Of a stretch of 64,000 bases of DNA, positions 13,782-29,274 are shown in pieces. The notes beneath the pieces are model-generated. The model was not told the origin of the DNA. It saw only the letters and a program-made list of their open reading frames with translations, and searched no databases. The position numbers and the translations under genes were made by a program. How positions within the stretch are numbered: position 1 is the first letter of the stretch; each line of letters begins with the position of its first letter. The stretch is from the IMG/VR virus record IMGVR_UViG_3300037882_003354, positions 186,001 to 250,000 of that record; one strand, 5' to 3'.

Positions 13782-14636
13782 TTACGAGTTGGCAATACTC
13801 ACTGTGCCAGTGGTGGCCGCATCGATGGACCAGTTGGCAACTGCACCATTGGCATATTCAAAACTACCATTAACTGTAAACTGAGTTAGCACTGCTCTTC
13901 TAGCAGTCAACTTGGTGACAAAATAGGTGCTGGCATTGACGTCTGTGGCGACCAGGTTCATTTGACCTTCCGTTAAACTGCCTGTTGCTGTGGAAGCCAA
14001 TCTGCATATGCCGGTGGCTGTGGTGCGCACCAGGTAGCGGGTGCTGGATTCTTGCTTGACAATGTCACCAGTTTGACCACTGCCACCGCCTGGCACGAAT
14101 GCACCCACAGATAATCCATTGGCACGACCTGTGGTCAGTACAGTGGAGGAAACAGCAGCCGTGGTGGGTGAGTCCCTGAAACTGATTGATCCACTGACGG
14201 TGCTGGCGTTATTCAGGGTGACATTGACCAGTCCTGACTCAATGGAGGAAACATAAGTAGGGCTGGCATTGATACCTGTACCAGTCACTTGCATGCCTGT
14301 GAAAATGCCGGCGGTGGTAACATAAACAATACTGGTTCCGGTAGTACCAGTTCCTGCCACTACAACCCCAGTGGCCGTGGTGATGGTCATGGTGGCCGTG
14401 GAAATATATCCAGATCCATTGTTGGTCATGGTGATGCTGGAAAAATTACGGTTGGCAAACACCGGGGTACCAGTTGCAGTGACCCCACCTGGAATGCTGG
14501 GTGCACTGAATGTCACAGTGGCGCCGGATGAATAATTTGCACCGGTGTTGGAAAAGTTAACTGAGGCAATGCCCTCACCACCAATACCGCCGGCGGTCAG
14601 TTCACCGAAAAACTTCTTTTTAATTGGACGTCCCAT
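13782..14636 (-). CDS. Thr/Gly-rich virion protein downstream of major capsid (possible head decoration; likely start MGRPIKKKFFG)
   Basis: SD GAAGGAG precedes ATG 14636. Beta-rich composition with an ITMTNNGSGY-type motif. It has its own promoter and terminator. Confidence 0.6.
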   Translation of the reverse strand: MGRPIKKKFFGELTAGGIGGEGIASVNFSNTGANYSSGATVTFSAPSIPGGVTATGTPVFANRNFSSITMTNNGSGYISTATMTITTATGVVVAGTGTTGTSIVYVTTAGIFTGMQVTGTGINASPTYVSSIESGLVNVTLNNASTVSGSISFRDSPTTAAVSSTVLTTGRANGLSVGAFVPGGGSGQTGDIVKQESSTRYLVRTTATGICRLASTATGSLTEGQMNLVATDVNASTYFVTKLTARRAVLTQFTVNGSFEYANGAVANWSIDAATTGTVSIANS

Positions 14637-14726
14637 TTTATTTTCTCCTTCAGAAAAACACGGCGTTCTAGGCCGTACGCGGTTGGATTTCCGCATAAAA
14701 TTCACATGATTGTAAATTATACCTGG

Positions 14727-24109: not shown

Positions 24110-24328
24110 TTGAACCTCGATAACGCAGGTATCGAGAGGTTGGTCAGACAGCATGATGACCATACAAAAGCCATCAAAGAAGAGTTGTTGAGAATGTGCT
24201 GGTACATGCGAGGTGGGCTGAGTTACAATGAAGCCCACCTGCTGACCGTGGAAGAACGTGCGTTGGTTAACAAGATTATTGAAGGCAACCTGGAAACCAC
24301 CAAAGAAACACAGTTGCCTTTCTTTTAA
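24110..24328 (+). CDS. gp51-like baseplate/tail assembly domain, probably expressed as a frameshift extension of gp26
   Basis: CWYMRGGLSYNEAHLLTVEER resembles the gp51/gpT-type motif. It has only a TTG start with a poorly spaced SD. Confidence 0.6.
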   Translation: MNLDNAGIERLVRQHDDHTKAIKEELLRMCWYMRGGLSYNEAHLLTVEERALVNKIIEGNLETTKETQLPFF

Positions 24329-24942
24329 ATCTTTTTGTCCAAGAACTTACTGTGAAATATCACAGATTCTGACGTGGTCGTACGGTTGGGATTGTTAGGG
24401 TTGGCCACATGCGTGCGGCTAGTGGGTAGTCTAGTAACTGTACCACCTGTACTAGACGTTGGGTTTAATTGATTTGCCATCTGCGCCATGGCACCACCAG
24501 CTGGCGCAGCGGCCGGTTTAGCTGCCTGCGCAGAACCCAATTGTTTTTGCAGGAGTGCTAATATGCGTTGCTTGCCCTTGGCGTCCAACTGATTGATGTT
24601 AGTTTTGACTTGGTTATACAATGATGGTGCAGCCGCTGGCTGCGGTGTCGTCCCAGGGGTAGAGGTTGCTGGAGCAGTCGCAGACTGTGCTGTTGCTGAG
24701 GGAGCAGTTGTAGACGCAGGCGCTGTCCCAGTTGCATCATCTCCTGCACCAGCTACATAGTTCTTGCCTGCTTGGTATCCTGTCTTGACAGCACTCCCAA
24801 GTCCAGCCACACCGCCGGCAACAGCACCAACGCCCTTGGCGGCAGTACCGACAGCTTTGCCTATACCAGCACCAATTTTATTCAGAATTGGTCCTTCCTC
24901 AACCGGCTCGGTGTTTTCTATAATTAAGTCATGTATTCTCAT
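24325..24942 (-). CDS. Hypothetical low-complexity protein, possible internal head protein
   Basis: 205 aa, Ala/Gly/Thr/Pro-rich, N-terminus MRIHDLIIE. SD GAGG and TAAATA at 24966-24971 lie upstream. Confidence 0.6.
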   Translation of the reverse strand: MRIHDLIIENTEPVEEGPILNKIGAGIGKAVGTAAKGVGAVAGGVAGLGSAVKTGYQAGKNYVAGAGDDATGTAPASTTAPSATAQSATAPATSTPGTTPQPAAAPSLYNQVKTNINQLDAKGKQRILALLQKQLGSAQAAKPAAAPAGGAMAQMANQLNPTSSTGGTVTRLPTSRTHVANPNNPNRTTTSESVIFHSKFLDKKI

Positions 24943-24986
24943 ATAAACCTCTAGGTCAATGCTTTTATTTATGACCTATTGAGGGG

Positions 24987-25029
24987 AAGTGAACTCCGTT
25001 CACTTGCTTCATCGCTGGCGCTCGAAGCA
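24987..25029. repeat. Two adjacent inverted repeats
   Basis: AAGTGAAC-TCC-GTTCACTT (24987-25005) and TGCTTC-N13-GAAGCA (25005-25029). Confidence 0.7.
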
Positions 25030-25084
25030 TTTTTACAAAACACTAACATAATTATATCACCAGGTGTACGGCGAAGCGGAGTTG

Positions 25085-25445
25085 GTATTATCTAGATTAA
25101 GCGGTCACACTTAGCCCACTCGGGGCGAGAGTGTTTGTGAACATTATCTGAGTAGCACAGTCACATAGCGTTAGAGCATTACAGAGGCGGTTGTCCGGTA
25201 CCTCGAGCTCCGTCTTAACAACGGCAGTCAACAAAACATACGCTATCATGCTTGCTGACCCAGGGTTTTTCTCCCTTCATTGGGCCTTTTTAAATTACGT
25301 TCAAACAATCAAACCGCGGCATTTTGCGATCTTCGTCCTGTAAAGGATAGTGATTGAGTGCTCCCTTCAGCGGAGAGTCTTCCGTTCCAGTGACCCTAGG
25401 TCCTGTTGTCATGGGCACCCGATATTTGCCGGTGCTAGCCTATAC
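25085..25445 (-). ncRNA. Candidate large structured non-coding RNA, family not recognised; boundaries approximate
   Basis: Lies in the only long ORF-free tract of the window (24943-25459). About ten helices can be drawn by eye, with G-U pairs valid only on the minus strand and a 7-bp loop-to-distal pairing. Confidence 0.65.
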
Positions 25446-25459
25446 TGAAAAAAGTTGCC

Positions 25460-25885
25460 TTAGAGTTTTTTAATGTGCGAGCCATGTACACGGACACTAA
25501 TTTGCCCGTTGTAATAATCATTAGATTCCAAAACTTTGTGTTCAAACTGAAGTCTTGCTTCAATGTAAGAACACTCTGCCTTGGATTTACAGTAGTACAG
25601 TATCTCTCGCTTGAATTTGTCGGTGCCTATGGTGTTGATATCAGCGGTTAGTTCTACGCTGGATCCATAATAGTCTTGCCAATCGGAGTCAATCTTGCTC
25701 CTAATTTTTTTTCGTTTCTTGGTGCCGTTCTTCAACTTCACAGTCTTGTAGGTCGTTTTACTAAATTTTGCTAGTTTTTTGCCTATGTATTTGCGTCCTG
25801 TGACCATATTGGTTATAAGATAAACATAACCAACACAGTCCTCAGGTAATTCTTCAACTATAGTATTTTCAAAATACCAAGTCAT
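25460..25885 (-). CDS. Minimal GIY-YIG family nuclease (catalytic domain only)
   Basis: GYVYLITNMVTGRKYIGKK, YYGSS, conserved Glu (SYIEARLQ) and Asn (YYNGQI). 141 aa. Confidence 0.85.
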   Translation of the reverse strand: MTWYFENTIVEELPEDCVGYVYLITNMVTGRKYIGKKLAKFSKTTYKTVKLKNGTKKRKKIRSKIDSDWQDYYGSSVELTADINTIGTDKFKREILYYCKSKAECSYIEARLQFEHKVLESNDYYNGQISVRVHGSHIKKL

Positions 25886-25888
25886 CTA

Positions 25889-26086
25889 TTACTTGGCTGC
25901 CTTGGCCTCTTTACGAGCATTTTTTTCTGCTGTAATTTCGTTGCGACGAGCCTTGATCAATTTGCCCATTTCGGCCAGAGCCTTGCGAGCGCGAGCACCT
26001 GCTGCTGAATTGCCGCCGGTGAACTTTTCGTCCTCGGCTAAAAATTCATCAAAGTGCTTTTTTAATTCGGTTGCTGTTGATTCCAT
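25889..26086 (-). CDS. Small basic protein, histone H1-like Hc1 family
   Basis: EKFTGGNSAAGARARKALAEMGKLIKARRNEI matches the Hc1-type GNKAAxxRxRK core. SD AAGGA upstream. Confidence 0.7.
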   Translation of the reverse strand: MESTATELKKHFDEFLAEDEKFTGGNSAAGARARKALAEMGKLIKARRNEITAEKNARKEAKAAK

Positions 26087-26366
26087 ATTGTTCTTCCTTT
26101 TTTACTTTTCTATCAGCGACTTTTTTAGTCTTGACGGCTTGCGCCTCCAGTTTGCGTTGGTCCCTGCGAGCATTTGACACGCTGACAGTGGCCTCGGCCA
26201 GAGTTTTTTGCATTTTAGTCAGTCGACGCAATTCGCGACGAAGTATCACACCCGCCTCCACGGTGACATTTCCAACAAATAATTGATGTTGATTATGAAA
26301 ATCCACCATGTTTTCTACATACTGCATGTATAAATTCTGATATTTTTCCAGCTCATCTTTAAACAT
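26049..26366 (-). CDS. Hypothetical helical basic protein, possible diverged Hc1-like paralogue
   Basis: 105 aa; FVGNVTVEAGVILRRELRRLTKMQK aligns loosely with the neighbouring gene. Confidence 0.5.
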   Translation of the reverse strand: MFKDELEKYQNLYMQYVENMVDFHNQHQLFVGNVTVEAGVILRRELRRLTKMQKTLAEATVSVSNARRDQRKLEAQAVKTKKVADRKVKKEEQYGINSNRIKKAL

Positions 26367-26437
26367 AAATTACAATATTATTAGATATGTACATGTAAAT
26401 TTATCTTTTTCAGGCAAACATTCATCTTATTCTCGGA

Positions 26438-28216
26438 TCAGGCGTCTGCGTTTTGCTCGTATGTGGTAAATCCACCCTCTTTGATCACCCGTAACACATT
26501 GTTCACCCGACCCACCAGTTCGTCTCGATGGCTGATCAGGTATATGTTCTTGCTGCGCTCTCTGGCCATTTTTTTCAGCACAGAAAGCGAATTTTCAACA
26601 CCAGCGGCGTCCATACCAGAGTCAATCAGCTCGTCGATAAACAACAGGTTGATGCTCTGATATAGTCCCTCCCAGACATCTCTAAACGCAAAACTCATGG
26701 AGAGTATCAGTCGATTTCGCTCACCTCTGGACAGATTGTCAAAATCCAGGTCCTGCCCCAGTTGCGTGATCTCCACAGTCAGGTCATTCTGGAATATCAC
26801 TTTATGTGGCAGCCCCAGTTTGTCAATGTAATAGCCCAGGCGCTTGTTCAGATATGTCAAATTTTGATCGATGATCTTCTTGCGAATGAAACTGTCCTTG
26901 TTAGTCAGCAACTTGTATAAAAATTCCTGATGGTCTTTTAATTTGGTCTGTGTGTTGATCATGTCCCAGGAGATTTCCTGTATGGCAGTCTTGTTCAGTT
27001 CAACAATTTGCTCCTGATAGGGGTTGGCGTCATCAATTCTGGACAGCAGACTTTTTTCCAGACTGTCCACATTATTCTTGTGACCCAAGGCTGCTGCTTC
27101 AGTGTCATAGAATGTCACAGGCTTGCGCGGTTGTTGTCCAATTTCTTCTATGCTGGCGTTGATCAACGTCAGATCGTCGTTGACTTTCTTCTGATAGGTC
27201 AATGCATCTTCCAGATTCTTTTCTGACAACCGGGTCATTTGTTCGTGCTTGTGGTCATGCAACTCTTGTTCACATGCCGGACAACTTTTGTCCACCAATT
27301 TTTCCAACTCTTGGACATATTTGTTCACGGTCTTGTCAGCCTGACTCACTGCGGCCTCCAGTGTGGCTTTTTGTTTTCTCAGGTTGACCAGCCGGGTGTT
27401 ATTGTCATCCCAGACCTTGGTCTGAGCATGCAATTCCAGTTCATGGGCAATGTTGACATTTTCCAGAGCCATGATGGACTTGCTGAAACTTTCAATGTCG
27501 TTTTCCTTCTTGGATTCCCAGGCCGAACTCTTGATCTCCAGACTGCTGATGCTTTTTTGTACATTCTCGTTGGCTGCTTTGACGCCTTCGATTCTAAACT
27601 GTTCCACCTGTATGGCATCCTTGGCGTCTTTAATCTGCAATTTGAGTAATTCAGCCTTCTCACTCAGCATGGTGATGCCCAGCAACTGCTCGATGACCTC
27701 ACGTTGTTCGGCAGCCTTCATGGACAAGAATGGCTCGGTGTAAGTGTTCAGGGCCACCAGATGCTTGAACATGGTGTGACTCATGCCCAGCAACTGCTCA
27801 ATGGATTTTTGTGTCTCCCTGCTGTCACCCTGACTGTCGTCATCAACGTCATCAGACTTTATCTGTTGATTGTTCACATAAAACTTCAGCAGGTTGGGTT
27901 TGCGACCACGTTCGATACGATACTTGGTGCCAGCCTTTTCAAACTCCACAGTGACCAGCATGGCCTTGCCGTTGATCTTGTTGATCAGGTTTTCTTTGCG
28001 TATGTTGGTCAGAGCCTGCCCATACAATGCATAACTCAATGCATTGATCAGGGTGCTCTTGCCAGTTCCGTTTCTGCTGCCAGTGTCATCTCCGCCCAGA
28101 TCAATGTTGGAGCCCAACACCAGTGTCAATGGAGCCTGATCAAAAACCACAGCCTGGGAAACATTGCCCACGGACAAGAAATTTTTCACACAGATGTTCT
28201 GTATACGAAATGTCAT
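26438..28216 (-). CDS. gp46: Recombination ATPase gp46 (Rad50/SbcC-like)
   Basis: Walker A RNGTGKST, zinc hook CPAC, signature LSRGE, Walker B LLFIDE, and LISH. Confidence 0.95.
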   Translation of the reverse strand: MTFRIQNICVKNFLSVGNVSQAVVFDQAPLTLVLGSNIDLGGDDTGSRNGTGKSTLINALSYALYGQALTNIRKENLINKINGKAMLVTVEFEKAGTKYRIERGRKPNLLKFYVNNQQIKSDDVDDDSQGDSRETQKSIEQLLGMSHTMFKHLVALNTYTEPFLSMKAAEQREVIEQLLGITMLSEKAELLKLQIKDAKDAIQVEQFRIEGVKAANENVQKSISSLEIKSSAWESKKENDIESFSKSIMALENVNIAHELELHAQTKVWDDNNTRLVNLRKQKATLEAAVSQADKTVNKYVQELEKLVDKSCPACEQELHDHKHEQMTRLSEKNLEDALTYQKKVNDDLTLINASIEEIGQQPRKPVTFYDTEAAALGHKNNVDSLEKSLLSRIDDANPYQEQIVELNKTAIQEISWDMINTQTKLKDHQEFLYKLLTNKDSFIRKKIIDQNLTYLNKRLGYYIDKLGLPHKVIFQNDLTVEITQLGQDLDFDNLSRGERNRLILSMSFAFRDVWEGLYQSINLLFIDELIDSGMDAAGVENSLSVLKKMARERSKNIYLISHRDELVGRVNNVLRVIKEGGFTTYEQNADA

Positions 28217-29226
28217 AGGTTGTTATAAATTGCTAACAGGGTGTTGCGATCAAATTGTTCAGATTCCACATTGATCAACTCTTGGCTGACAATTTGATCA
28301 ATACTTTCAAATTTGGCGTCAGGGTTGTCTTCTATGGTGCCGTCCAGATTGGTTTTATCTTGAATCAGGCTAATCTCACGGATGTCATAATCAGCAACAA
28401 ATGTTTCCTTGATGAAGTTTGCTTCTTCATAACTGATGTCAATGTCAAGATTGACCTTGAGATACATTTTACTTTTCATGATGGCATCTTTACCATCAAT
28501 CAGATCACTGAGTTTGACAGTTCTGTACTTGGGTGCATCCTGCCAATTGATGAACTCAGGCTCACCACCCCACTCCAAGGTCATCATGCCACGGTCATCG
28601 TCCCAGGCATCTGCAAAGTTGTGCGGGAAGGCGTTGCCAATATACCAAATCTTGCCCTGATTTTGACGTTTGTGAAAGTGGCCGCTGAACACATAATCTT
28701 GATGTTGGAAGTGACTGGGCTGTAGTTCACCATGATCCGGCATCTGTATCATGGCGTTCATGTAGAACAAGGGCAGTTCGAAATGCCCAAACATGTACTT
28801 GCTCTTGACCGAGCTGATGTCGCGCCATTCGTCGCCCACCAACCAGGGCACCAGTGTGACATCCCGGATGGTGGTCACATTCTCGATTACAGTGACACCG
28901 GGAATATGCCGGCCAAATGATGAACTGTGGATGTCACGTTTGTCCTTGTAGAATAGATCGTGATTGCCTGGGAACCAGAAGAATTGTTCAAATGCAGCAC
29001 CCAGTTTTTCCAGACATCTGATGCTGGAGTCCAGGGTGAATAGATTCACATTGTTACGATTATGATTCCAATCACCCATGCAAATGGCGGTCTCGCAACC
29101 TGCTGCCTGTGCTTGCTGGATAAACCAGTCTACAAATTCTTCACAGTCCTTGAGATGCGTGGGACTGTTGGACTTTAGACCAAAATGAATGTCAGTCATG
29201 CAAGCAACTTTTTTAAACAAGGTCAT
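28213..29226 (-). CDS. gp47: Recombination nuclease gp47 (Mre11/SbcD-like; likely start MTLFKKVAC)
   Basis: Metallophosphoesterase motifs TDIHFG, GDWNH, GNHD, GHFE and SGHFH. SD GGAGG precedes ATG 29226. Confidence 0.95.
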   Translation of the reverse strand: MTLFKKVACMTDIHFGLKSNSPTHLKDCEEFVDWFIQQAQAAGCETAICMGDWNHNRNNVNLFTLDSSIRCLEKLGAAFEQFFWFPGNHDLFYKDKRDIHSSSFGRHIPGVTVIENVTTIRDVTLVPWLVGDEWRDISSVKSKYMFGHFELPLFYMNAMIQMPDHGELQPSHFQHQDYVFSGHFHKRQNQGKIWYIGNAFPHNFADAWDDDRGMMTLEWGGEPEFINWQDAPKYRTVKLSDLIDGKDAIMKSKMYLKVNLDIDISYEEANFIKETFVADYDIREISLIQDKTNLDGTIEDNPDAKFESIDQIVSQELINVESEQFDRNTLLAIYNNL

Positions 29227-29245
29227 ATAACCCCTCCTGTTTAAG

Positions 29246-29274
29246 AGTGTAGCAGCACACAATTACAAAGTCAA
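29246..29274 (-). promoter_or_regulatory. Sigma70-type promoter for the gp47 operon
   Basis: TTGACT-N17-TACACT with an extended -10 TG. Confidence 0.7.

What the first reader, a model, noticed from the sequence alone, without database searches (positions are those of the whole stretch)
25085..25885. Candidate new ribonucleoprotein system: minimal GIY-YIG nuclease plus its directly abutting structured RNA
Seen: the RNA begins about 20 nt after the nuclease stop codon on the same strand, at the end of the gp47-gp46-Hc1 transcription unit. The 141-aa protein is a bare catalytic domain with no C-terminal DNA-recognition modules. It carries a very basic insertion (KFSKTTYKTVKLKNGTKKRKKIRSKI) where GIY-YIG enzymes have their Arg-bearing helix. 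Known: GIY-YIG homing endonucleases such as I-TevI get specificity from separate C-terminal domains, and compact nucleases such as IscB and TnpB get it from an adjacent structured RNA. Inference: the basic insertion binds the RNA, which guides, activates or restrains the nuclease. Co-expression with the Mre11/Rad50-like gp46/47 suggests programmed breaks feeding recombination-dependent replication, homing or exclusion of competing DNA. No guide or target was identified here.
Basis: inference. Interest (0 to 1): 0.85.

Follow-up and report, generated by a model that had tools for sequence, protein, structure and literature searches.

The report
Phage nuclease gene plus orphan RNA
A small nuclease gene in a freshwater giant phage is followed by a real, large folded RNA, partly catalogued since 2010 as the function-unknown Rfam motif Polynucleobacter-1; the pairing holds across hundreds of related phages, but no test I could run shows that the RNA guides the nuclease.

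Summary
A 141-aa SegE-family GIY-YIG protein (25460-25885, minus strand) ends the gp47-gp46-Hc1 unit. A structured RNA starts 19 nt after its stop codon.

The RNA is not new. Its first 138 nt are Rfam RF01718, Polynucleobacter-1 (112 bits, cut-off 37). In 2010 its authors noted that it lies downstream of this gene family (PSSM2_218-like).

New here:
- The conserved, covarying RNA runs about 370 nt (to about 25072). With a terminal double hairpin it reaches about 450 nt.
- The 5' domain differs between related phages, while the 3' domain is shared.
- Two 7-nt boxes in the 3' domain always carry the same sequence, with at least 17 variants seen. No complementary partner was found nearby.

Linkage is strong: 112 of 116 RNA-anchored viral loci have the nuclease upstream. 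All of them share one syntenic phage lineage.

Evidence against a nuclease-RNA particle:
- Five Polynucleobacter-type (Burkholderiales) bacterial chromosomes carry the RNA with DUF6641 and no GIY-YIG.
- Nuclease homologues outside the lineage lack the RNA.
- Unrelated genes sit between nuclease and RNA in 18 loci.
- The basic arm is family-wide.
- Protein and RNA do not co-vary.

Most likely this is an autonomous, trans-acting structured RNA at the end of the operon. The ribonucleoprotein idea is not excluded, but nothing tested here supports it.

The parts
25460..25885 (-). Stand-alone SegE-family GIY-YIG nuclease gene, 141 aa (phrog_447, often mislabelled 'NAD synthetase')
   Evidence: ORF. 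PF19835 at E 1.2e-32 over the full model. phrog_447 at E 1.5e-36. Invariant Y22, Y33, G35, K37, Y72, S75, E109 and N126 in alignment A2. AF2 pLDDT 97.
25303..25440 (-). RNA 5' domain, the known Rfam family RF01718 Polynucleobacter-1
   Evidence: cmscan 112.2 bits against a gathering score of 37, model positions 1-141. Helices covary.
25072..25302 (-). RNA middle and 3' domains, not covered by the Rfam model. Conserved in all RNA types and in the bacterial copies.
   Evidence: Conservation profile. nhmmer hits to this part in 166 loci. Covarying helices and long-range pairs. Shared by type-B loci that have a different 5' domain.
25241..25245 (-). Hairpin loop UAGCG, forming a pseudoknot with CGCUA at 25166-25170
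   Evidence: Covarying pairs 25243-25168 (GC 75, AT 10), 25242-25169 (CG 69, TA 16) and 25241-25170 (GC 64, AT 19).
25143..25152 (-). R1: CUC plus the 7-nt box AGAUAAU
   Evidence: Box positions 25149, 25145 and 25143 carry the same bases as 25093, 25089 and 25087 in 88 of 90 sequences.
25087..25096 (-). R2: UCU plus the same 7-nt box AGAUAAU
   Evidence: As for R1. The rule CTC(N7)...TCT(same N7) is met in 228 of 366 loci, against 10 in shuffled loci. 17 recurrent box variants were seen in phages, plus AGCGAAA in bacteria.
25040..25071 (-). A+T-rich linker, variable in length
   Evidence: Low identity and many gaps in the alignment.
24988..25029 (-). Terminal double hairpin with conserved loops (GAGCG..AGCGA and GCGUAGC-like). 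Probably the 3' end of the RNA.
   Evidence: Stems covary, for example 24999-24993 (GC 34, AT 32, TA 7) and 25024-25010 (TA 60, CG 22). Present in types A, B and C and in the bacterial copies.
25889..29262 (-). Upstream genes of the same unit: Hc1-like, an unnamed ORF, gp46-like (Rad50/SbcC type) and gp47-like (Mre11/SbcD type)
   Evidence: ORFs, Pfam. This synteny is conserved in every RNA-bearing viral locus examined.

Best explanation
This is the terminal module of a conserved phage recombination-gene operon. The module is a stand-alone SegE-family GIY-YIG nuclease gene followed by a large structured non-coding RNA. The RNA has a conserved core of about 370 nt and reaches about 450 nt with its terminal double hairpin. 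Its first third is the known Rfam motif Polynucleobacter-1.

Shown:
- Both parts are real, ancient and under purifying selection.
- The RNA has a complex pseudoknotted fold, with a 5' domain that differs between lineages and a conserved 3' domain.
- The same RNA class exists in Polynucleobacter-type bacterial chromosomes without any GIY-YIG gene.

Inferred:
- The RNA is made by read-through of the operon. The gap after the stop codon is 19 nt here (median 28 nt across loci), and the simple consensus scan found no terminator-like site in it.
- The RNA is kept stable by its own structure.
- It acts as an autonomous trans-acting RNA, not as a guide for the neighbouring nuclease.
- It probably works through two 7-nt boxes, R1 and R2. 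No intramolecular pairing partner was found for them. They always carry the same sequence, so they would engage two copies of one partner: a nucleic acid with two identical sites, or a dimeric protein.
- The nuclease is a domesticated DNA enzyme that uses its family-wide basic beta-hairpin arm on its substrate. The RNA and the nuclease are neighbours because both belong to the same old transcription unit.
For: - Identity of the parts.
- Extent and structure of the RNA: conservation profile; 12 or more covarying helices; pseudoknot and long-range pairs.
- RNA variants: types B and C share the 3' domain, the boxes and the double hairpin.
- Bacterial copies: RF01718 at 70-104 bits in 5 chromosomes, no GIY-YIG by tblastn, DUF6641 divergently adjacent in 5 of 5, and the same double hairpin.
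- Nuclease without RNA: Melnitz, phiN3, ACP17 and MED4-213; 0 of 53 loci below 50% identity, median distance to the next ORF 81 nt (40-49% identity bin); these loci are all outside the gp46/47 synteny.
- Unrelated same-strand genes between nuclease and RNA in 18 of 112 loci.
- Basic arm not specific to RNA-bearing loci.
- No covariation between the boxes and the protein. Mantel r is 0.35 with GIY and 0.43 with gp46.
- Matched boxes: mutual information 0.88-1.25 between the two copies and at most 0.39 with any other column. No complement in cis.
- Age and selection: synonymous sites are saturated (pS 0.67-0.98) while pN for GIY is 0.12-0.32, which means old divergence under purifying selection.
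Against: - Within phages the RNA was never seen without the GIY-YIG gene in the same unit (112 of 116; the other 4 loci have too little upstream sequence to judge). A functional tie therefore cannot be excluded.
Read-through, processing and RNA ends are all inferred.
- The partner of the boxes is unknown, and the trans-acting role rests on that one pattern.
- The bacterial copies may sit in mobile islands that exploit such phages, so they may not show an independent function.
Confidence: 0.45

Rival explanations
1. One reading: nuclease and RNA form a ribonucleoprotein. The basic arm binds the RNA, which guides, activates or restrains cutting.
For: The linkage within phages is near-perfect and ancient. 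It holds across RNA types A, B and C and further variants, down to about 50% protein identity. The protein has no DNA-recognition domain and carries a long, very basic beta-hairpin. The RNA carries short variable boxes that could give specificity.
Against: The RNA exists without the nuclease in bacteria. The nuclease family is mostly RNA-less, and its arm is equally basic in those members. The boxes do not co-vary with the protein. Co-phylogeny with GIY is no better than with gp46. Genes are inserted between the two parts in 18 loci. All co-occurrence lies inside one syntenic lineage, so shared descent explains it. No target was found.
Confidence: 0.17
2. The element acts in cis. It is a structured 3' end that terminates, stabilises or regulates the gp47-gp46-GIY transcript.
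For: It is always the last element of the unit, even where extra genes are inserted. It abuts the stop codon. The terminal double hairpin lies where convergent transcription meets in some loci.
Against: About 370 nt, 12 or more helices, pseudoknots and near-invariant junctions are far more than a 3' stabiliser needs. In bacteria the same RNA stands alone, divergent from DUF6641, and not at the end of an operon. The matched boxes are unexplained by this model.
Confidence: 0.12
3. The region also works as DNA, for example as a replication origin or protein-binding site, with R1 and R2 as iteron-like repeats. The bacterial islands would carry a copy in order to exploit the phage.
For: The two direct repeats change together as identical sequences, which is what binding sites for one protein do. 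The region lies next to recombination and replication genes. The bacterial copies lie in island-like, variable contexts, with a small integrase in 2 of 5.
Against: Extensive compensatory base-pair changes, including long-range pairs, point to a folded single strand and not to a duplex site. There are only two repeats. No initiator-like gene was identified nearby.
Confidence: 0.08
4. The GIY-YIG gene is a selfish free-standing homing endonuclease parked beside a conserved RNA gene that holds its cleavage site.
For: It belongs to the family of the T4 Seg homing endonucleases. Such enzymes commonly target conserved sequences (established knowledge, not tested here). GIY identity is uncorrelated with gp46 identity (r = 0.07), which indicates mosaicism.
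Against: There is no presence/absence polymorphism. The gene is in every syntenic locus and is single-copy in 504 phage records. Synonymous sites are saturated while amino-acid change is low, so there was no recent spread. It has no DNA-binding domain. No RNA-bearing phage locus lacking the gene was found.
Confidence: 0.05

Closest known systems
Polynucleobacter-1 RNA motif (Rfam RF01718; Weinberg et al. 2010, PMC2864571)
   Same: The window RNA is a full-length, high-scoring member (112 bits). As the authors noted, it lies downstream of a PSSM2_218-like gene and occurs in Polynucleobacter and in freshwater samples.
   Different: The Rfam model covers only 141 nt. The conserved RNA is about 370-450 nt, with a shared 3' domain, pseudoknot, matched boxes and terminal double hairpin. 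Its 5' domain is replaced in some lineages. In 2010 it was not detected in any purified phage; here it is found in hundreds of viral contigs.
T4 Seg-type free-standing GIY-YIG homing endonucleases (Pfam PF19835 SegE_GIY-YIG)
   Same: Same catalytic-domain family by profile. The GIY and YIG motifs and the Glu and Asn residues are conserved.
   Different: It has the catalytic domain only (141 aa), with no C-terminal DNA-binding part. It is single-copy, fixed in its lineage and under purifying selection. No Arg is invariant. No solved structure matches by sequence or by fold.
IscB/TnpB with omega RNA (HEARO) and other RNA-guided nucleases
   Same: A compact nuclease gene sits next to a large structured RNA on the same strand.
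   Different: There is no RuvC or HNH domain, no Rfam HEARO hit and no terminal guide segment. The RNA occurs without the nuclease and the nuclease without the RNA. No target match was found.
Large 'ornate' orphan RNAs of phages and mobile elements (GOLLD, ROOL, OLE)
   Same: Size, complexity, occurrence in phages and mobile islands, and unknown function. This comparison rests on my own knowledge and was not tested here.
   Different: There is no sequence or model similarity (no Rfam hit other than RF01718). This RNA has a fixed place at the end of a recombination-gene operon. No oligomer evidence exists.

Membership tests
Rfam RF01718 Polynucleobacter-1 | Covariance-model score above the curated gathering score over the full model | tested here: met
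   112.2 bits against 37, model positions 1-141, E 1.6e-23.
Rfam RF01718 Polynucleobacter-1 | Model helices supported by compensatory changes in relatives | tested here: met
   Hairpins in the 5' domain show 2-5 canonical pair types in 97 sequences. They also give top mutual-information pairs.
Rfam RF01718 Polynucleobacter-1 | Location downstream of a GOS11034 / PSSM2_218-like gene | tested here: met
   PSSM2_218 is 38% identical to the window protein, E 3e-20. 112 of 116 RNA-anchored loci have the gene upstream.
GIY-YIG nuclease superfamily (SegE subfamily, PF19835) | Profile match and the GIY...YIG motif pair | tested here: met
   E 1.2e-32 over the full model. The sequence GYVY...YIG is in the translation. 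Y22, Y33 and G35 are invariant.
GIY-YIG nuclease superfamily (SegE subfamily, PF19835) | Conserved catalytic Glu and Asn | tested here: met
   E109 and N126 are invariant in 66 diverse members.
GIY-YIG nuclease superfamily (SegE subfamily, PF19835) | Conserved Arg on the first helix | tested here: not met
   No invariant Arg. K37 is invariant and R93 nearly so. The place of the helix is taken by a beta-hairpin, residues 40-66.
GIY-YIG nuclease superfamily (SegE subfamily, PF19835) | Fold like solved GIY-YIG domains | tested here: inconclusive
   Foldseek against the PDB gave a best E of 0.15 and TM-score of at most 0.2, with no GIY-YIG entry. No sequence or profile hit to the PDB. The order of strands and helices in the model is compatible with the fold.
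GIY-YIG nuclease superfamily (SegE subfamily, PF19835) | Nuclease activity | not testable with these tools
   Needs an enzyme assay.
Free-standing homing endonuclease | Sporadic presence among close relatives, and signs of recent spread | tested here: not met
   Present in all syntenic loci, and one copy per record in 504 phage records. pS is saturated and pN low.
Free-standing homing endonuclease | Separate DNA-binding domain that sets the target | tested here: not met
   The catalytic domain fills 3-129 of 141 aa.
RNA-guided nuclease (Cas / OMEGA type) | RNA and nuclease depend on each other, so neither is found alone | tested here: not met
   RNA without the nuclease in 5 bacterial genomes. 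Nuclease without the RNA in cultured phages and in 53 of 53 loci below 50% identity.
RNA-guided nuclease (Cas / OMEGA type) | Hypervariable guide segment that matches targets | tested here: not met
   Both RNA ends are conserved. The only programmable-looking parts are two matched 7-nt boxes. No complementary site is enriched or positioned nearby: own boxes 101 sites, swapped boxes 84.6 +/- 8.3, with no clustering.
RNA-guided nuclease (Cas / OMEGA type) | Physical binding of the RNA by the nuclease | not testable with these tools
   Needs a pull-down or gel shift. The covariation proxy was negative.
Group I intron with an intron-encoded GIY-YIG gene | Match to the intron core model, and a split host gene | tested here: not met
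   No Rfam hit other than RF01718 at E up to 5 in 24800-26200. The flanking genes are complete.

The most novel reading that the evidence does not exclude
The two matched 7-nt boxes are a programmable recognition device. The RNA would hold two identical sites of a nucleic-acid target and present them to the co-expressed GIY-YIG nuclease or the gp46/gp47 complex. That would be an RNA-directed cutting or recombination system unrelated to Cas or OMEGA. In bacteria the same RNA would serve a different protein, DUF6641.
Probability: 0.1. Interest if true: 0.9.

Novelty: new member of a known kind. Interest (0 to 1): 0.5.

Why it matters
As stated, the finding joins two things already on record: Rfam RF01718, and its noted position after a PSSM2_218-like gene. 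That part is not a discovery.

What matters is that the recorded motif is only the first third of a much larger RNA with an elaborate fold. This RNA is abundant in freshwater and estuarine phages and is also present in their likely hosts. It is fixed at the end of the Mre11/Rad50-like operon.

It also has an unusual signature: two boxes that change together as identical, not complementary, sequences. That pattern gives a concrete handle for finding what this orphan RNA binds. If the partner turns out to be a nucleic acid, the RNA would be a new kind of programmable element. If it is a protein, the RNA would be a new phage ribonucleoprotein.

Tried and rejected
- RNase P-like core. By eye, UAAGACGGAGCUC ... 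ACUCCGCUU resembles helix P4 with its bulge. Rejected: no RNase P hit at E up to 5; the 3' strand lies in a poorly conserved stretch; and GAGC at 25210-25207 covaries with 25174-25177 instead.
- tRNA or tmRNA: none found.
- Other Rfam families (HEARO, introns, ribozymes): none found.
- 'RNA-less' close homologues. Eleven loci had no RF01718 hit. They turned out to carry variant RNAs of types B and C and further variants. Only L071, in a different genomic context, seems to lack an RNA.
- A partner in cis for the boxes. No covarying third column. No reverse complement within -1.5 to +1.2 kb. Own and swapped boxes pair equally well with every RNA region.
- A target in the flanking 5-14 kb. A weak excess of about 2 sd, with no positional clustering.
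- An R1-R2 duplex. It is contradicted by the GCAU and CAU variants, which change both strands alike.
- Protein-RNA covariation and co-phylogeny: negative.
- Structural relatives of the protein: none in the PDB by sequence, profile or fold.
- DUF6641 homologue in phages: none. No PADLOC or NCBIfam hits for DUF6641.
- Literature: nothing on DUF6641, and nothing on a GIY-YIG gene with an RNA of this kind.
- fold_alignment on A1 was cut off before its pair table. The pair counts come from my scripts.

Full report
**What is at the coordinates**

On the minus strand the window carries four genes in a row. They are a gp47-like metallophosphoesterase (28213-29262), a gp46-like SMC/AAA_23 ATPase (26438-28216), an unnamed ORF (26049-26366) and an Hc1 histone-like gene (25889-26086). 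Next comes a 141-aa ORF at 25460-25885.

This ORF matches Pfam PF19835 (SegE_GIY-YIG) over the whole model at E 1.2e-32 and has no other domain. In PHROGs it is phrog_447, whose label 'NAD synthetase' is a misnomer.

A 517-nt stretch with no plausible gene follows, up to the next minus-strand ORF (24325-24942). Rfam places family RF01718, Polynucleobacter-1, at 25303-25440 (-) with 112 bits against a cut-off of 37. That is 19 nt after the stop codon.

The window is part of IMG/VR contig 3300037882_003354, a 322.5-kb phage contig.

**The RNA is known, but only in part**

Weinberg et al. (2010, PMC2864571) described the motif from Polynucleobacter and freshwater metagenomes. They wrote that most copies lie downstream of genes of family GOS11034, possibly related to PSSM2_218 of cyanophage P-SSM2. 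They also wrote that the 3' half is not always detected and that no purified phage carried the motif.

PSSM2_218 is a 145-aa protein annotated 'NAD synthetase'. It is 38% identical to the window protein, E 3e-20.

The Rfam model covers only 141 nt. I aligned 97 non-redundant (<93% identical) homologous regions. Conservation runs from about 25445 to about 25072. An A+T-rich linker of variable length follows, and then a conserved double hairpin at about 25029-24988.

RNAalifold with pair counts gives at least 12 helices, many with 3-6 canonical pair types. Mutual-information analysis of alignment A1 (85 phage and 5 bacterial sequences) adds further features:
- a pseudoknot between loop UAGCG (25245-25241) and CGCUA (25170-25166);
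- a helix GUUG/CAAC (25222-25219 with 25193-25190);
- covarying stems in both terminal hairpins.

This is a genuine, elaborate RNA of about 370 nt, or about 450 nt with the terminal hairpins.

**How tight is the link to the nuclease**

A DNA pattern taken from the RNA retrieved more than 120 viral contigs. Of the 116 with a clear 5'-domain hit, 112 have the GIY-YIG gene upstream on the same strand. The other four have only 38-545 nt of upstream sequence available. The gap is at most 80 nt in 92 loci.

In 18 loci, 0.7-1.1 kb lies between nuclease and RNA. Among protein-anchored loci one gap reaches about 1.9 kb (L039). These gaps hold unrelated same-strand genes: SGNH-like hydrolases, other proteins, and once a second GIY-YIG gene.

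Among the 80 closest protein relatives (72-100% identity), eleven had no RF01718 hit. They carry variant RNAs instead:
- Type B has a different 5' domain joined to the same 3' domain.
- Type C is more divergent but keeps the 3' motifs and the double hairpin.

Searches seeded with more distant representatives show an RNA of this class downstream of proteins only 50-59% identical to the window's. It was detected in at least 49 of 81 such loci. This is a lower bound, because loci scored negative (L226, L230, L233) proved on inspection to hold further variants.

**Why the link does not show a joint function**

Every RNA-bearing viral locus has the same gene order: gp47, gp46, a variable stretch, GIY-YIG, the RNA, then convergent baseplate genes. 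Co-occurrence is therefore what shared descent predicts.

Outside that lineage the nuclease has no such RNA:
- Melnitz, phiN3, ACP17 and MED4-213 gave no Rfam hit at E up to 0.1.
- 0 of 53 viral loci with proteins below 50% identity have it, and the median distance to the next ORF in the 40-49% identity bin is 81 nt.

The family itself is large. It has 2101 representative clusters, nearly all 130-165 aa, and it is single-copy in 504 phage records, mostly cyanomyoviruses.

The RNA also occurs without the nuclease. A string from the Polynucleobacter-type 3' domain found five bacterial chromosomes or MAGs (Polynucleobacter and related Burkholderiales) and no viral contig. All five have RF01718 at 70-104 bits and no GIY-YIG homologue. 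All five have a divergently transcribed DUF6641 gene next to the RNA. Two have a small tyrosine recombinase downstream. The bacterial RNA is about 495 nt and ends in the same double hairpin. No DUF6641 relative occurs in the phage loci.

**Direct tests of the ribonucleoprotein idea**

The 'basic insertion' is part of the family consensus. AlphaFold2 models it with high confidence as a long beta-hairpin, residues 40-66, overall pLDDT 97. Its length and charge are the same whether or not an RNA follows the gene: 29.7 residues and +12.5 in 211 RNA-bearing loci, against 31.0 residues and +10.7 in 82 others.

No protein column tracks the variable RNA boxes. Their best mutual information ranks 195th, 152nd and 56th among 199 control RNA columns.

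RNA distances correlate with GIY distances (Mantel r 0.35) no better than with the gp46 C-terminus (r 0.43).

Synonymous sites are saturated for both GIY and gp46 (pS 0.67-0.98) while pN for GIY is 0.12-0.32. The nuclease is therefore an old gene under purifying selection, not a recently spreading homing element.

None of this rules out binding, which only an experiment can test. It does remove the comparative support the hypothesis would need.

**An unexplained feature worth following**

The 3' domain contains two copies of a motif. R1 is CUC plus a 7-nt box (25152-25143). R2 is UCU plus the same box (25096-25087). Each is preceded by GUGAC.

The variable box positions co-vary as identical bases:
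- 25149/25093: GG 54, AA 35.
- 25145/25089: GG 63, AA 27.
- 25143/25087: TT 48, AA 34, GG 7.

Mutual information between the copies is 0.88-1.25, against at most 0.39 with any other column. The three variable positions compared match in 88 of 90 aligned sequences.

The exact rule holds in 228 of 366 loci, against 10 in shuffled controls. Seventeen recurrent box variants occur in phages, such as GGAUGAA, AGAUAAU, GCAUGAU, ACAGAAA and AGACGAA, and bacteria have AGCGAAA.

No complementary partner turned up:
- none within the RNA;
- none within -1.5 to +1.2 kb;
- none clearly in the flanking 5-14 kb, where own boxes gave 101 sites against 84.6 +/- 8.3 for swapped boxes, with no clustering.

A duplex between R1 and R2 is contradicted by variants that change both copies alike. 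The simplest reading is that both boxes meet the same outside partner, either a nucleic acid with two identical sites or a dimeric protein. This is inference, not a result.

**Verdict**

The parts and their adjacency are real. The RNA is a typical member of a known but functionally orphan family, and its neighbour gene had been noted before.

The best-supported reading is an autonomous, trans-acting structured RNA that ends an ancient recombination-gene operon. The nuclease would be a neighbour, not a partner. The ribonucleoprotein reading keeps a modest probability.

The protein has no solved structural relative by sequence, profile or fold.

Noticed in passing
window 14634-14717 (-): A second Rfam motif, freshwater-2 (RF02980, 71.5 bits against a cut-off of 49.9). 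It is a candidate cis-regulatory leader that ends in AAGGAGAAAAUAAAUG, that is, a ribosome-binding site and a start codon.
   Followed up: no
L026, L028, L039, L052, L090, L093, L110, L112, L166, L179, L184, L200, L201 (between the GIY-YIG gene and the RNA): The short gap between nuclease and RNA is a hot spot for extra same-strand genes of 0.7-1.9 kb. These are several SGNH/GDSL-like hydrolases, other unrelated proteins, and a second GIY-YIG gene in L200. The RNA always stays last in the unit.
   Followed up: partly
window 25460-25885; L207 26712-27149 (P-SSM2 PSSM2_218): This GIY-YIG family (phrog_447, T4-GC 213) is annotated 'NAD synthetase' in many phage records. The label has no support from Pfam.
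   Followed up: partly
L202-L206 (Polynucleobacter spp., an Oxalobacteraceae chromosome and a betaproteobacterial MAG): The bacterial copies of the RNA sit next to a divergent DUF6641 gene in 5 of 5 loci. A 188-aa tyrosine recombinase lies downstream in 2 of 5, and toxin-antitoxin-like genes lie nearby. Neighbours vary as in mobile islands.
   Followed up: partly
A1 columns about 430-486 (window about 25184-25178); for example L025, L089, L115, L129: Some RNAs carry a 20-60-nt extra hairpin at one site of the 3' domain. Several of these are built from short tandem units such as TATAGTCAAC / TTATAG.
   Followed up: no
viral loci L005-L371: Identity of the nuclease to the window protein is uncorrelated with identity of gp46 (r = 0.07). 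Loci with about 53% gp46 identity can have about 80% GIY identity, and the reverse also occurs. This suggests old module exchange within the operon.
   Followed up: partly
window 25889-26366 (-): The phage encodes an Hc1 (chlamydial histone H1-like) protein of 65 aa. Its start overlaps the end of the preceding 105-aa ORF by 38 nt.
   Followed up: no
window 24325-24942 (-): The gene after the RNA encodes a 205-aa protein rich in Ala, Thr, Pro and Gly. It has no hit in Pfam, PHROGs, NCBIfam or PADLOC. Its N-terminus (MRI..L..EN) recurs in related loci.
   Followed up: no
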